This document shows positions 32,977 through 35,081 of a DNA stretch of 64,000 nt, piece after piece. The DNA is taken from positions 124,001 to 188,000 of IMG/VR virus record IMGVR_UViG_3300020380_000001, one strand, 5' to 3'. The stretch's first letter is position 1. Each line of letters begins with the position of its first letter. Under the pieces are notes generated by a model. The model did no database searches. It was not told the origin of the DNA and was given only the letters and a program-made list of their open reading frames with translations. The position numbers and the translations under genes are program-made.

Positions 32977-33774
32977 TTATTCACTTAAGTACAGGTCTTC
33001 TTCCAACTCTGCTCTGTATTCTGGATCTCTAATTGCACGGGCGTATCTGTCCGGGTCGTACGAACTGACTTTGCCTGCCAAATAATAATGATGGGCCTTT
33101 ATGTTTGCTAACTTGCGAGTAACCCGGCCTTCAGATACCATACCGGTATGGTGATAATGTGATTTTTCCATATACCTCAGTACATGATCAAGTATCATCG
33201 GCGTGTACAGTATGCGGTTTCGGGTTGCTGTATGGATCAAATGTCCGAAACTAACTTCTCGTTTATGTGCATTTCCAAGTGGTCTTGAAACAGTCACATA
33301 GCGCTTTATATAAAAGCTCTTGTGTAGGCGATCGGTATTGTTCTTTACTATAGTTTCATATGCACATTGCATGAGATTCGCAAAAAACTTGGCGCGGTCA
33401 CCTGCAATGCCATGATACGGACCGTCAAGCCTTATTATCTTTTTTGACATGAACTGGGAAAATTCAACTTCGTCAAGTATCAAGTACTCACCGACGTGAC
33501 AGTAGTATGGTATGCCTATTCCCTTCTTCGCTATAGAAGCAAGAGCGTTGGCTGTCTTTACCATTTCTTTAGGACTAGGGATATAACCGTCACTTATGGT
33601 ATCAATGTCCAGATCCGGTGTGCATAGTGTAGTGGCTAGGCGCATTGCTTGCCAATGTTGGTGATTGCTACCTGACACGTAATAGGAATTGGCCTGCGAT
33701 TCAGATCTACACAACCGAGCTTTCGCCGCGGCTATATCGATGCCGACTTTCTCGAATAGTTCACGATATGTCAT
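32977..33774 (-). CDS. hypothetical protein
   Basis: 265-aa ORF. Confidence 0.8.
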   Translation of the reverse strand: MTYRELFEKVGIDIAAAKARLCRSESQANSYYVSGSNHQHWQAMRLATTLCTPDLDIDTISDGYIPSPKEMVKTANALASIAKKGIGIPYYCHVGEYLILDEVEFSQFMSKKIIRLDGPYHGIAGDRAKFFANLMQCAYETIVKNNTDRLHKSFYIKRYVTVSRPLGNAHKREVSFGHLIHTATRNRILYTPMILDHVLRYMEKSHYHHTGMVSEGRVTRKLANIKAHHYYLAGKVSSYDPDRYARAIRDPEYRAELEEDLYLSE

Positions 33775-33777
33775 GTA

Positions 33778-33972
33778 TTACACTCTGTTATGAATAGCTT
33801 GGCTAAAAACACTTAATAAAAATGCCTTTAGCCAAGAATCTTCACGACCCTTGTGTTTGCGCTTTCTGTTATACTTGGTAGCGTCTTCTTCAACACGCTT
33901 CCTAAACATCGGCGTTCTTACCACTTGTTTAATGGCGCTTGGTTGGCTATGTTTAACTTTCTTCTTGCCCAT
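33778..33972 (-). CDS. arfA: alternative ribosome-rescue factor A homologue
   Basis: SAIKQVVRTPMFRKRVEEDATKYNRKRKHKG aligns with the E. coli ArfA core NAIEALLHDPLFRQRVE...SYMRKGKH; hydrophobic C-tail; SD GGAGG. Confidence 0.78.
   Translation of the reverse strand: MGKKKVKHSQPSAIKQVVRTPMFRKRVEEDATKYNRKRKHKGREDSWLKAFLLSVFSQAIHNRV
33798..33836 (-). promoter_or_regulatory. 17-bp mRNA hairpin in 3' coding region of arfA (candidate RNase III site)
   Basis: CUUGGCUAAAGGCAUUU-uuauu-AAGUGUUUUUAGCCAAG, three G-U pairs possible only on the coding strand. Confidence 0.65.
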
Positions 33973-34014
33973 AATTTCCTCCTGGCGTTAGAAGAGGGCA
34001 TTGTATTAATGCCC

Positions 34015-34290
34015 TTACATTAGAACTGGTATGATCATCAAAGTCAACATCAAAGCGTAGAAAATTATCCGTAGGTAGACATTAGTCTTGTGCTTGAATG
34101 CGTCGAACCTTTCCAGATACTCAGCCACATTGCGTGCTGACGGCAGTGCTAATAACACCGCAATAATACCCACAAAAGCTTCTAGATACACCGTTAGCAC
34201 TACGGCAGCGATACAGAGTACCACAACAATAATACCATGGCCTATACAGTCTACGGTTTCTTCGTCTAAGTCGCTGAATAAATGATTCAT
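34015..34290 (-). CDS. membrane protein
   Basis: Three hydrophobic segments. Confidence 0.75.
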   Translation of the reverse strand: MNHLFSDLDEETVDCIGHGIIVVVLCIAAVVLTVYLEAFVGIIAVLLALPSARNVAEYLERFDAFKHKTNVYLRIIFYALMLTLMIIPVLM

Positions 34291-34419: not shown

Positions 34420-34749
34420 TCACTCCATCGGCGGCACGGTTATTTTTCCCTGGAACGCAAGTAGGGCAATGGTTTCTGGCTCTATCTTAACAAACGTTTC
34501 ACGGGTTTTATTAGACGCACGCTCATGTCGTCCTGGTGTGCCTACGCGCACTGATGATCCTATCCACATAGAAGCACCGGAGGCTGTAGGCTTTTTAATA
34601 CGGCCTAGCTTTAAGCCTGACGACTTATAAACACTCACAGCAACAATGTCGCCTGCACGTATTTCATTTCCGAGACAGTCAGTCCCTACTTCATCTGATG
34701 TATCTGACATAAGTTCCTCTACTTTTTGGCGATATGATTTCTGCGTCAT
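34420..34749 (-). CDS. hypothetical protein
   Basis: 109-aa ORF. Confidence 0.7.
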   Translation of the reverse strand: MTQKSYRQKVEELMSDTSDEVGTDCLGNEIRAGDIVAVSVYKSSGLKLGRIKKPTASGASMWIGSSVRVGTPGRHERASNKTRETFVKIEPETIALLAFQGKITVPPME

Positions 34750-35081
34750 TACTCTTCTTTAAGATTCAAGAGGACAGGTGTGTCAAACCCGCCTCGTTTT
34801 TCTCTCTTGTACTTACGCTTATCTTCAATGCCGGTTTCAGAAACCTTACCAATTTTGATAATTGCTGCCAAAACTTCAAACACGTCTGCTAGTTCTTCTT
34901 CAAGCGCTTCGGTATCACCTCGATAAATCTCAGCTAGAACTTCTTCGACTTCTTCGTGTGCTTTGTCACAAAGTAAGGCAAGGTGATCTTGAGTGGTAAG
35001 CTCGTCTACGGGAAGTAGGGGCAGTGGGTCAGATGCAATATCGGGGATTTTATCCCTGATCAATTTGTGTGGGTACTTCAT
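34749..35081 (-). CDS. MazG-like/phosphoribosyl-ATP pyrophosphohydrolase family NTP pyrophosphatase
   Basis: KLIRDKIP, EEVEE, EELADVFEVL, KREKRGGF. Confidence 0.85.
   Translation of the reverse strand: MKYPHKLIRDKIPDIASDPLPLLPVDELTTQDHLALLCDKAHEEVEEVLAEIYRGDTEALEEELADVFEVLAAIIKIGKVSETGIEDKRKYKREKRGGFDTPVLLNLKEE

What the first reader, a model, noticed from the sequence alone, without database searches (positions are those of the whole stretch)
33778..33972. Phage-encoded ArfA homologue retaining a coding-region hairpin like the RNase III/tmRNA control switch
Seen: an ArfA-like core, a hydrophobic C-tail (WLKAFLLSVF), and a 17-bp mRNA hairpin (33798-33836) over those tail codons whose G-U pairs work only on the coding strand. 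Established: E. coli arfA mRNA is cut by RNase III in a 3' coding hairpin, giving a nonstop message that tmRNA destroys, so active ArfA is made only when trans-translation is saturated. Inference: the phage carries a sensor-coupled ribosome-rescue backup, useful against host defences that cleave mRNA or tRNA and stall ribosomes. This fits the unusual tRNA-like repertoire.
Basis: partly seen in the sequence, partly recalled or inferred. Interest (0 to 1): 0.72.

Follow-up and report, generated by a model that had tools for sequence, protein, structure and literature searches.

The report
Phage ArfA gene with regulatory hairpin
A 306-kb marine jumbo phage carries a small gene of the ArfA ribosome-rescue family. 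The gene keeps the strong hairpin over its last codons that bacteria use to make ArfA only when the main rescue system (tmRNA) is overloaded, so this is a new phage member of a known system, not a new kind of system.

Summary
ORF 33778-33972 (- strand, 64 aa, AGGAGG ribosome-binding site) has an ArfA-like core and a hydrophobic tail.

**Hairpin**
- A 17-bp hairpin with three G-U pairs and a 5-nt loop lies at 33798-33836 on the coding strand.
- It folds at -24.7 kcal/mol, z = -6.9.
- Only 1 of 5000 synonymous recodings is as stable.
- It has no U-run after it.

**Homology**
- The single sequence is below the Pfam cut-offs: DUF7230 23.1 bits, ArfA 16.6 bits.
- A profile of its relatives hits E. 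coli ArfA at E = 1.9e-9, and hhalign gives 96.9%.
- The RF2-contacting strand (PMFRKRVE) and the basic KH segment are conserved.
- E. coli Ala18 is Gln here.

**Comparison with relatives**
- The hairpin starts at the Trp codon that aligns with the start of the E. coli arfA hairpin.
- Of 14 family genes examined, ten of the 11 with a C-terminal extension carry a strong hairpin there, each of different sequence. The eleventh has only a weak 10-bp one.
- The three short forms, two of them from isolated phages, stop right after the core and have no hairpin.

**Transcripts**
Marine metatranscriptome contigs of a relative cover arfA codons 1-39 and end 18 nt before the hairpin. This is suggestive only.

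RNase III cutting, tmRNA coupling, RF2 dependence and any anti-defence role remain inferred.

The parts
33778..33972 (-). arfA-like coding sequence, 64 codons plus a TAA stop at 33778-33780
   Evidence: ORF list and translation. A 98% identical protein occurs on 5 other marine contigs and on a 310-kb IMG/VR relative.
33978..33983 (-). Shine-Dalgarno AGGAGG, 5 nt upstream of the ATG
   Evidence: Read directly from the sequence. Invariant in relatives.
33847..33945 (-). ArfA-like core, residues 10-42. It holds the PMFRKRVE strand and the basic YNRKRKHKG segment with the KH motif (K39-H40, 33853-33858).
   Evidence: phmmer alignment to E. coli ArfA chains. Profile match E = 1.9e-9. hhalign 96.9%. 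Roles of the strand and the KH motif come from PMC8012679.
33805..33834 (-). Hydrophobic tail codons W47-F56 (WLKAFLLSVF), encoded by the hairpin arms
   Evidence: Translation. E. coli ArfA likewise has a hydrophobic, poorly conserved tail that makes the full-length protein unstable (PMC8012679 and PMC3989581).
33798..33836 (-). Main mRNA hairpin: 5' arm 33820-33836, loop 33815-33819, 3' arm 33798-33814. It has 17 pairs including 3 G-U and no U-run after it.
   Evidence: Folds. Synonymous recoding test, 1 of 5000. Genome-wide rarity. No terminator call. No Rfam family.
33790..33845 (-). Extended structure: outer 5-bp stem GUGAA/UUCAU around a 4x3 internal loop, about 22 pairs in all
   Evidence: Fold. 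In relatives the single C-to-U change in the outer stem keeps a G-U pair.
33854..34274 (-). Stretch covered by metatranscriptome contigs of a ~97% identical relative. Both runs end exactly at 33854, which is arfA codon 40, 18 nt upstream of the hairpin.
   Evidence: read laying pieces, records 6 and 10. Nothing is laid on 33003-33853.
32977..33774 (-). Downstream gene of 265 aa and unknown function. Its ATG lies 4 nt after the arfA stop, so a cut in the hairpin would also separate it from arfA.
   Evidence: ORF list. No Pfam, PHROG or Atlas match.
34015..34290 (-). Upstream gene of 91 aa, a predicted membrane protein (weak DUF2975 match), followed by a small 7-bp hairpin in the 42-nt spacer before arfA

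Best explanation
The gene encodes a phage copy of the alternative ribosome-rescue factor ArfA, from the branch that Pfam files as DUF7230, and it is wired like bacterial arfA.

**Proposed mechanism**
1. The last third of the reading frame is an RNA hairpin.
2. The transcript is most likely truncated in or at this hairpin, so the message has no stop codon. Host RNase III would do this: there are about 22 pairs counting the outer stem, no U-run, and no phage RNase III.
3. Ribosomes that translate it stall at the 3' end. Host tmRNA tags the product for degradation, and any full-length protein carries a destabilising hydrophobic tail.
4. Only when trans-translation is saturated does untagged, truncated ArfA accumulate, ending near residues 47-52.
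5. Its basic KH-containing segment would then occupy the empty mRNA channel of other stalled ribosomes. Its PMFRKRVE strand would recruit host RF2 to release the peptide, returning ribosomes to phage protein synthesis.

**Shown here:** homology, the hairpin and its position, codon-level tuning, the family-wide link between tail and hairpin, the absence of a terminator, and RNA contigs that stop before the hairpin.

**Inferred:** the cut, the tmRNA coupling, the RF2 dependence and the benefit to the phage.
For: **Homology**
- The top six PDB sequence hits are all ArfA.
- The profile of 24 relatives hits ArfA chains at E = 1.9e-9.
- 16 of 24 relatives match Pfam ArfA (best 1.5e-12) and 21 of 24 match DUF7230.
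- hhalign against enterobacterial ArfA gives 96.9%, E = 1.6e-10.

**Conserved functional segments** (with roles from PMC8012679)
- PLFRQRVE in E. coli against PMFRKRVE here.
- Y-x-R-K-x-K-H with the KH motif.

**Hairpin**
- -24.7 kcal/mol, z = -6.9, strand-specific.
- 1 of 5000 synonymous recodings is as stable.
- It is one of 6 such stems on that strand in 306.5 kb.
- It starts at Trp47, aligned with Trp51, where the E. coli hairpin starts.

**Family survey**
- Ten of the 11 genes with 18 or more residues after the core have a strong hairpin there, with different sequences (z from -3.0 to -5.3). The eleventh, P0021, has only a 10-bp stem (z = -1.5).
- The three short forms have none.
- The window and P0007 share the loop and inner stem but have different, still complementary, outer arms.

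**Other**
- No U-run and no terminator call.
- The phage lacks RNase III, release-factor, SmpB and tmRNA genes, so host factors would be used.
- RNA contigs from two runs of one marine metatranscriptome end at 33854, with nothing over the hairpin, tail, stop or next gene.
- The E. coli mechanism is taken from PMC3989581 and PMC8012679.
Against: - The single sequence is below the curated cut-offs of both Pfam families: 23.1 bits against 27, and 16.6 against 25.5. NCBIfam has no hit.
- E. coli Ala18, where A18T blocks RF2 activation by steric hindrance (PMC8012679), aligns with Gln16 here. The position is variable in the family, with Lys, Arg and Ala all occurring. RF2 activation may therefore differ or be absent.
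- The main stem has 17 pairs, shorter than the 21-25 pairs of E. coli arfA.
- The RNA evidence rests on assembled contigs of one sample at low depth. Other contig breaks are also shared between the two runs, so the end at 33854 may be an assembly break.
- Near-identical relatives give no covariation within the hairpin.
- The host is unknown.
- The hairpin lies in a polycistronic message 60 nt before the next gene's start. It could therefore serve operon processing instead.
Confidence: 0.6

Rival explanations
1. The hairpin is mainly an operon-processing or stability element. It would be an RNase III site of the phage T7 type, or a barrier to 3' exonucleases, that separates arfA from the 265-aa gene behind it. 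Truncation of arfA would be a side effect, or ArfA would be made constitutively as the 64-aa form.
For: - arfA's stop lies only 4 nt before the next ATG, so the two genes share a transcript.
- The structure of upper stem, asymmetric internal loop and lower stem resembles phage RNase III sites (own knowledge).
- RNA contigs show no coverage of the downstream gene.
Against: - The same kind of hairpin sits in the tail of relatives with quite different downstream neighbours, including convergent genes.
- Its start coincides with the E. coli arfA hairpin start.
- A pure processing site would not need to lie inside the reading frame, 18 nt before the stop.
Confidence: 0.15
2. The hairpin and tail are passengers. 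The phage recently captured a host arfA-type gene, and the regulatory hairpin persists by descent without being used during infection.
For: - The family is mostly bacterial, and bacteria-like contigs carry the closest hairpin-bearing forms.
- The phage copies from isolated phages all use the short, hard-stop form. P0004, on a phage-like contig, does the same.
- Only near-identical phage relatives are available, so purifying selection on the stem cannot be measured.
Against: - The closest non-identical homologue is only 68% identical, so capture is not very recent. The stem is nevertheless perfect, and codon choice is tuned to it at 1 in 5000.
- The gene has its own strong ribosome-binding site inside a phage operon.
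Confidence: 0.1
3. The protein binds stalled ribosomes but does not rescue them through RF2. As a DUF7230-type protein with a bulky residue at the Ala18 position, it might block the A site or mRNA channel against tmRNA-SmpB, or work with another partner.
For: - Gln16 aligns with Ala18, where even Thr abolishes RF2 activation in E. coli.
- The best Pfam match is DUF7230, not ArfA.
- No literature exists on DUF7230.
Against: - The RF2-contacting strand is almost identical to E. coli's.
- The family grades continuously into canonical ArfA, with 16 of 24 members matching both.
- Bacteria-like members keep the arfA-type hairpin, which makes sense only for a tmRNA back-up.
Confidence: 0.1
4. The hairpin is an intrinsic transcription terminator inside the coding region, as in some bacterial arfA genes, and gives the non-stop mRNA without any nuclease.
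For: - Premature termination at the stem-loop contributes in E. coli and other bacteria (PMC8012679 and PMC3989581).
- The relatives P0011 and P0009 have a U-run right after their hairpins.
Against: - Here the stem is followed by CUAUUCAUAAC, not a U-run.
- The terminator scan finds nothing at this site.
- The stem is A/U-rich with three G-U pairs.
Confidence: 0.05

Closest known systems
E. coli ArfA / arfA (YhdL; PDB 5U4I, 5MDV, 5H5U, 5MGP)
   Same: - Small basic protein with the P-[LM]-F-R-x-R-V-E strand and the Y-x-R-K-x-K-H segment with the KH motif.
- Poorly conserved hydrophobic tail.
- Strong hairpin over the tail codons that begins at the aligned Trp codon.
   Different: - About 30% identity over the core.
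- A 3-residue deletion in the KKGKGS loop.
- Gln in place of Ala18.
- Stem of 17(+5) pairs against 21-25.
- 64 aa against 72 aa.
- Sits inside a phage operon with another gene 4 nt downstream.
- No experimental data.
Pfam DUF7230 (PF23876)
   Same: It is the best-scoring family for this protein. 21 of 24 relatives match it, and they share the consensus VRTPMFRMRVE-DKTKYNRK-KHK.
   Different: The window protein is 4 bits under the cut-off. The family has no described function and no literature. My analysis indicates it is a branch of the ArfA superfamily.
Phage arfA-like genes: Pseudoalteromonas phage J2-1 (annotated ArfA), Citromicrobium phage RXM g10 (annotated ArfA), Salmonella phage Arash gp99c (annotated 'ribosomal protein L2'), Pseudomonas phage pf16 (unannotated ORF)
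   Same: Phage-borne ArfA-superfamily cores.
   Different: J2-1, Arash and pf16 end at a stop codon right after the basic core. J2-1 and Arash were folded and have no hairpin; pf16 was only translated. They would be made constitutively. The window phage keeps the tail and hairpin. I did not examine RXM's sequence.
arfA genes that become non-stop by premature transcription termination (described for some proteobacteria), and B. subtilis BrfA
   Same: A rescue factor made from a message that lacks a stop codon, so that tmRNA represses it. The KH motif is shared with BrfA (PMC8012679).
   Different: This hairpin has no U-run. BrfA is not homologous apart from the KH motif.

Membership tests
ArfA (PF03889) | Single-sequence match to the family HMM above the curated cut-off | tested here: not met
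   16.6 bits against a cut-off of 25.5, E = 0.005. 14.1 bits in the six-frame search. No NCBIfam hit.
ArfA (PF03889) | Homology at profile level to experimentally characterised ArfA | tested here: met
   The profile of 24 relatives against the PDB finds only ArfA chains, best E = 1.9e-9. hhalign gives 96.9%, E = 1.6e-10. 16 of 24 relatives match PF03889, best 1.5e-12.
ArfA (PF03889) | Strand that adds to the RF2 beta-sheet (E. coli P23-E30, PLFRQRVE) | tested here: met
   PMFRKRVE at residues 21-28, aligned without a gap. Its role is taken from PMC8012679.
ArfA (PF03889) | Basic C-terminal segment with the KH motif that fills the empty mRNA channel | tested here: met
   YNRKRKHKGR at residues 34-43, with K39-H40 aligned to E. 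coli K44-H45. Its role is taken from PMC8012679.
ArfA (PF03889) | Small residue at the Ala18 position (A18T abolishes RF2 activation) | tested here: not met
   Gln16 aligns with Ala18. The position is Lys, Arg, Gln or Ala among relatives. It is invariant Ala in enterobacterial ArfA.
ArfA (PF03889) | Hairpin in the 3' coding region over a poorly conserved hydrophobic tail | tested here: met
   It occupies the same aligned start as in E. coli.
ArfA (PF03889) | mRNA truncated (RNase III or termination) to a non-stop message that tmRNA represses | tested here: inconclusive
   Metatranscriptome contigs end 18 nt before the hairpin in two runs of one sample, but these are assembled contigs at low depth.
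ArfA (PF03889) | RF2-dependent peptidyl-tRNA hydrolysis on non-stop ribosomes | not testable with these tools
   The complex prediction with E. coli RF2 gave no verdict. The interaction forms on the ribosome.
DUF7230 (PF23876) | Match to the family HMM above the curated cut-off | tested here: not met
   23.1 bits against a cut-off of 27, E = 8e-5. It is the best-scoring Pfam family. 21 of 24 relatives match at E up to 0.1.
Intrinsic (rho-independent) terminator | G+C-rich stem followed directly by a U-run | tested here: not met
   The stem is followed by CUAUUCAU. The consensus scan gives no call at this site.

The most novel reading that the evidence does not exclude
The phage uses the host's own tmRNA load as a sensor of trouble during infection. 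Ribosomes may pile up on broken messages because of host mRNA decay by the phage, RNA- or tRNA-cleaving abortive-infection systems, or read-through by a possible phage UAA-reading tRNA. The hairpin-gated phage ArfA would then switch on and free ribosomes. Phages would thus have evolved two strategies: gated (this one) and always-on (J2-1, Arash, pf16). The DUF7230 branch, with a bulky residue at the Ala18 position, may engage the release factor in a way that differs from E. coli ArfA.
Probability: 0.2. Interest if true: 0.7.

Novelty: new member of a known kind. Interest (0 to 1): 0.45.

Why it matters
Ribosome rescue has been studied almost only as a bacterial housekeeping function.

A jumbo phage carries its own rescue factor and keeps the feedback hairpin that ties its synthesis to tmRNA saturation. 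This suggests that stalled ribosomes limit phage production, and that phages tune rescue and do not simply boost it.

The contrast between hairpin-gated and hard-stop phage copies gives a simple, testable pair of designs.

The analysis also gives the uncharacterised Pfam family DUF7230 a likely function, as an ArfA branch with the same mRNA architecture.

None of this changes the known mechanism. It extends that mechanism to phages and to a new sequence branch.

Tried and rejected
- **Complex prediction.** The phage core (residues 1-47, with an alignment of relatives) was folded against E. coli RF2. The result was no verdict, score 0.00, partner pLDDT 32-38. This is not evidence either way. 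That row was left out, not altered.
- **Nucleotide and protein searches of the phage collection.** The region found nothing. A 1039-aa neighbour found nothing. P0004 found nothing. No isolated relative or host could therefore be named.
- **Related loci.** A scan of IMG/VR found only one 98% relative. The scan of reference genomes found one truncated hit in a Gammaproteobacteria MAG.
- **Near-identical relatives.** They give no covariation in the stem.
- **Motif and family scans.** Rfam had no family. The promoter and terminator scan found nothing at the hairpin.
- **Downstream 265-aa gene.** No Pfam, PHROG or Atlas lead.
- **J2-1 downstream sequence.** The hydrophobic in-frame sequence after the J2-1 stop codon looked like a relic tail. 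It is the out-of-frame reading of the next gene, so I rejected it as evidence.
- **Structure prediction.** I did not fold the protein alone, because ArfA is disordered off the ribosome.

Full report
**What is there**

The window is bases 124001-188000 of a 306.5-kb virus record with direct terminal repeats. The record carries 23 tRNA genes and occurs in many marine metagenomes.

On the - strand, 33778-33972 is a 64-codon ORF, MGKKK...IHNRV. AGGAGG lies 5 nt before its ATG. It sits in a run of - strand genes.
- Upstream is a 91-aa membrane-like protein.
- Downstream is a 265-aa protein of unknown function whose ATG is 4 nt after the arfA stop.
- A 98% identical protein is found on five other marine contigs and on a 310-kb IMG/VR relative.

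**The hairpin**

The - strand RNA of 33798-33836 forms 17 uninterrupted pairs, three of them G-U, around a 5-nt loop. A 5-bp outer stem across a 4x3 internal loop extends the structure to 33790-33845.
- Energy is -24.7 kcal/mol, z = -6.9 against dinucleotide shuffles.
- The + strand keeps only 10 pairs.
- The same stem dominates the fold of the whole message.
- Only six stems of this length occur on that strand of the whole genome.
- Recoding codons 43-62 with synonymous codons at the phage's own usage gives -11.5 +/- 3.4 kcal/mol. One of 5000 recodings reaches the native value. Codon choice is therefore tuned to the structure.
- There is no U-run after the stem, no terminator call and no Rfam match.

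**Is the protein ArfA?**

On its own the sequence is sub-threshold.
- DUF7230 scores 23.1 bits against a cut-off of 27.
- ArfA scores 16.6 bits against a cut-off of 25.5.
- NCBIfam finds nothing, and PHROGs give only unnamed families.

Against PDB sequences, however, the six best hits are all ArfA.

An exhaustive HMMER search of 1.8 billion representatives gave 23 hits. One is a 3345-aa protein that I set aside as a probable lysine-rich, low-complexity match. The other 22 are small proteins with the consensus VRTPMFRMRVE-DKTKYNRK-KHK.
- A profile of these plus the J2-1 phage protein hits E. coli ArfA chains at E = 1.9e-9 and hits nothing else.
- 16 of the 24 match Pfam ArfA (best 1.5e-12) and 21 match DUF7230.
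- hhalign against enterobacterial ArfA gives 96.9%.

The alignment conserves the two segments that structures show to matter (PMC8012679).
- The strand that pairs with the RF2 beta-sheet: PLFRQRVE in E. coli, PMFRKRVE here.
- The basic segment with the KH motif that fills the vacant mRNA channel.

One feature is not conserved. Ala18, where A18T blocks RF2 activation, aligns with Gln16, and the position varies in this branch.

I therefore place the protein in the ArfA superfamily, on the DUF7230-like branch. There is a caveat about how, or whether, it activates RF2.

**Is the hairpin the arfA hairpin?**

In E. coli the arfA stem-loop is cut by RNase III. Failing that, it causes premature termination. 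Either way the result is a non-stop message that tmRNA represses, and full-length ArfA is unstable because of its hydrophobic tail (PMC3989581, PMC8012679).

I fetched E. coli arfA. Its hairpin begins at the Asn50/Trp51 codons. The phage hairpin begins at Trp47, which the protein alignment pairs with Trp51.

I then fetched DNA for further family members and folded the region after the conserved Y-x-R motif. Fourteen genes, counting the window's own and E. coli arfA, were folded in the final survey.

| Group | Genes | Result |
|---|---|---|
| 18 or more residues after the motif (11 genes) | window, E. coli, P0007, P0006, P0011, P0016, P0015, P0013, P0019, P0009, P0021 | All have a hairpin there. 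Ten are strong (z from -3.0 to -5.3), with unrelated stem sequences. P0021's is only 10 bp (z = -1.5). |
| Short forms (3 genes) | phage J2-1, P0004 from an 80-kb phage-like contig with Rnl2 and ThyX, phage Arash gp99c | All stop right after the core and have no hairpin. |

- The unannotated pf16 ORF also stops right after the core. It was not folded.
- Two bacterial-type members have a U-run after the stem, so they look like terminators.
- In others the stop codon lies in the loop or in the 3' arm.
- The window and its closest hairpin-bearing relative, P0007, share the loop and inner stem but have different, still complementary, outer arms.

This is the pattern expected if the 'tail' is essentially the translation of a selected RNA structure.

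**Transcript evidence**

Two metatranscriptome runs of one marine sample hold a ~97% identical relative.
- Their contigs cover the upstream gene and arfA down to exactly 33854 in both runs. This is codon 40, 18 nt before the stem.
- Nothing is laid on the hairpin, tail, stop codon or the whole downstream gene.
- This fits a message that ends at or in the hairpin.
- These are assembled contigs at low depth, and other breaks are also shared between the runs. I count it as suggestive only.

**Mechanism**

The phage has no RNase III, release-factor domain, SmpB or tmRNA. Every partner would therefore be the host's.

The most likely reading, at 0.6, is the E. coli scheme transplanted.
1. Truncation at the hairpin. 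I favour RNase III because there is no U-run and because about 22 pairs are available with the outer stem.
2. tmRNA tagging while trans-translation has spare capacity.
3. Accumulation of truncated, active ArfA when it does not.

Rivals:
- an operon-processing or stability hairpin (0.15);
- a passenger relic of recent capture (0.1);
- a ribosome binder that does not act through RF2 (0.1);
- an intrinsic terminator (0.05).

A role against RNA-cleaving host defences is plausible but untested. The genome offers little supporting context.
- It has one RNA-ligase-domain ORF.
- It has no RtcB, Pth or CCA-adding enzyme.

**Novelty**

The arfA hairpin switch is textbook for E. coli.

Phage arfA genes have been annotated in passing, in J2-1 in GenBank and in RXM g10 (PMC8953757). 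Others go unrecognised, namely Arash gp99c and pf16. I found no study of any of them, and no paper on DUF7230.

Three things are new here:
- a phage copy that keeps the regulatory hairpin;
- the contrast with hard-stop phage copies;
- the assignment of DUF7230 to the ArfA superfamily with the same mRNA architecture.

This is a new member of a known kind, of moderate interest.

Noticed in passing
G000:C1 189501-189597 (- strand), about 1.5 kb beyond the window's right end: ARAGORN calls a 97-nt 'tRNA-Stop' with anticodon UUA between two tRNA-Ser genes. The drawn anticodon stem has three G-U pairs and the long extra arm is unpaired, so the call is doubtful. The phage's 23 tRNAs lack Tyr, Phe, Trp and Val. 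A real UAA reader would send ribosomes to mRNA 3' ends and raise the need for rescue.
   Followed up: partly
L020:1-2692 (P0015 locus); L023:1292-2665 and L015:272-1531 (P0009 and P0011 loci): Bacteria-like ArfA/DUF7230 genes lie next to the RNA-repair genes RtcB/RtcR in one contig. In two others they lie next to a Ribosomal_S30AE (hibernation factor) gene.
   Followed up: no
L022:120-281 (P0019) and family members P0018, P0020, P0014: Several family members end in LAA, VAA or RAA, like the end of the ssrA degradation tag. In P0019 the stop codon sits in the hairpin loop. This could be an encoded degron doing the job of the hydrophobic tail.
   Followed up: no
L013:598-741 (Salmonella phage Arash gp99c); L014, about 590-735, + strand of the locus (Pseudomonas phage pf16): Arash gp99c is annotated 'ribosomal protein L2', but its C-terminal part is a canonical ArfA core (KKGKGSYRR). 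pf16 has an unannotated ArfA-like ORF that overlaps an annotated opposite-strand gene.
   Followed up: partly
window 33973-34014: The 42-nt spacer before arfA holds a small 7-bp hairpin (GGGCAUU...AAUGCCC) followed by UCUUCU, directly upstream of the AGGAGG site. It may be a weak terminator or a processing site.
   Followed up: no
window 34749-35081 (- strand): A MazG-type nucleotide pyrophosphohydrolase gene lies three genes upstream of arfA (29.3 bits). A MazG gene is also mentioned in the RXM phage that carries an annotated ArfA.
   Followed up: no
G000:C1 195136-195195 (- strand) and 105071-105130 (+ strand): These are the two strongest local hairpins of the genome, at about -30 kcal/mol with 20 or more pairs. 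One lies inside the tRNA gene cluster. Neither was examined.
   Followed up: no
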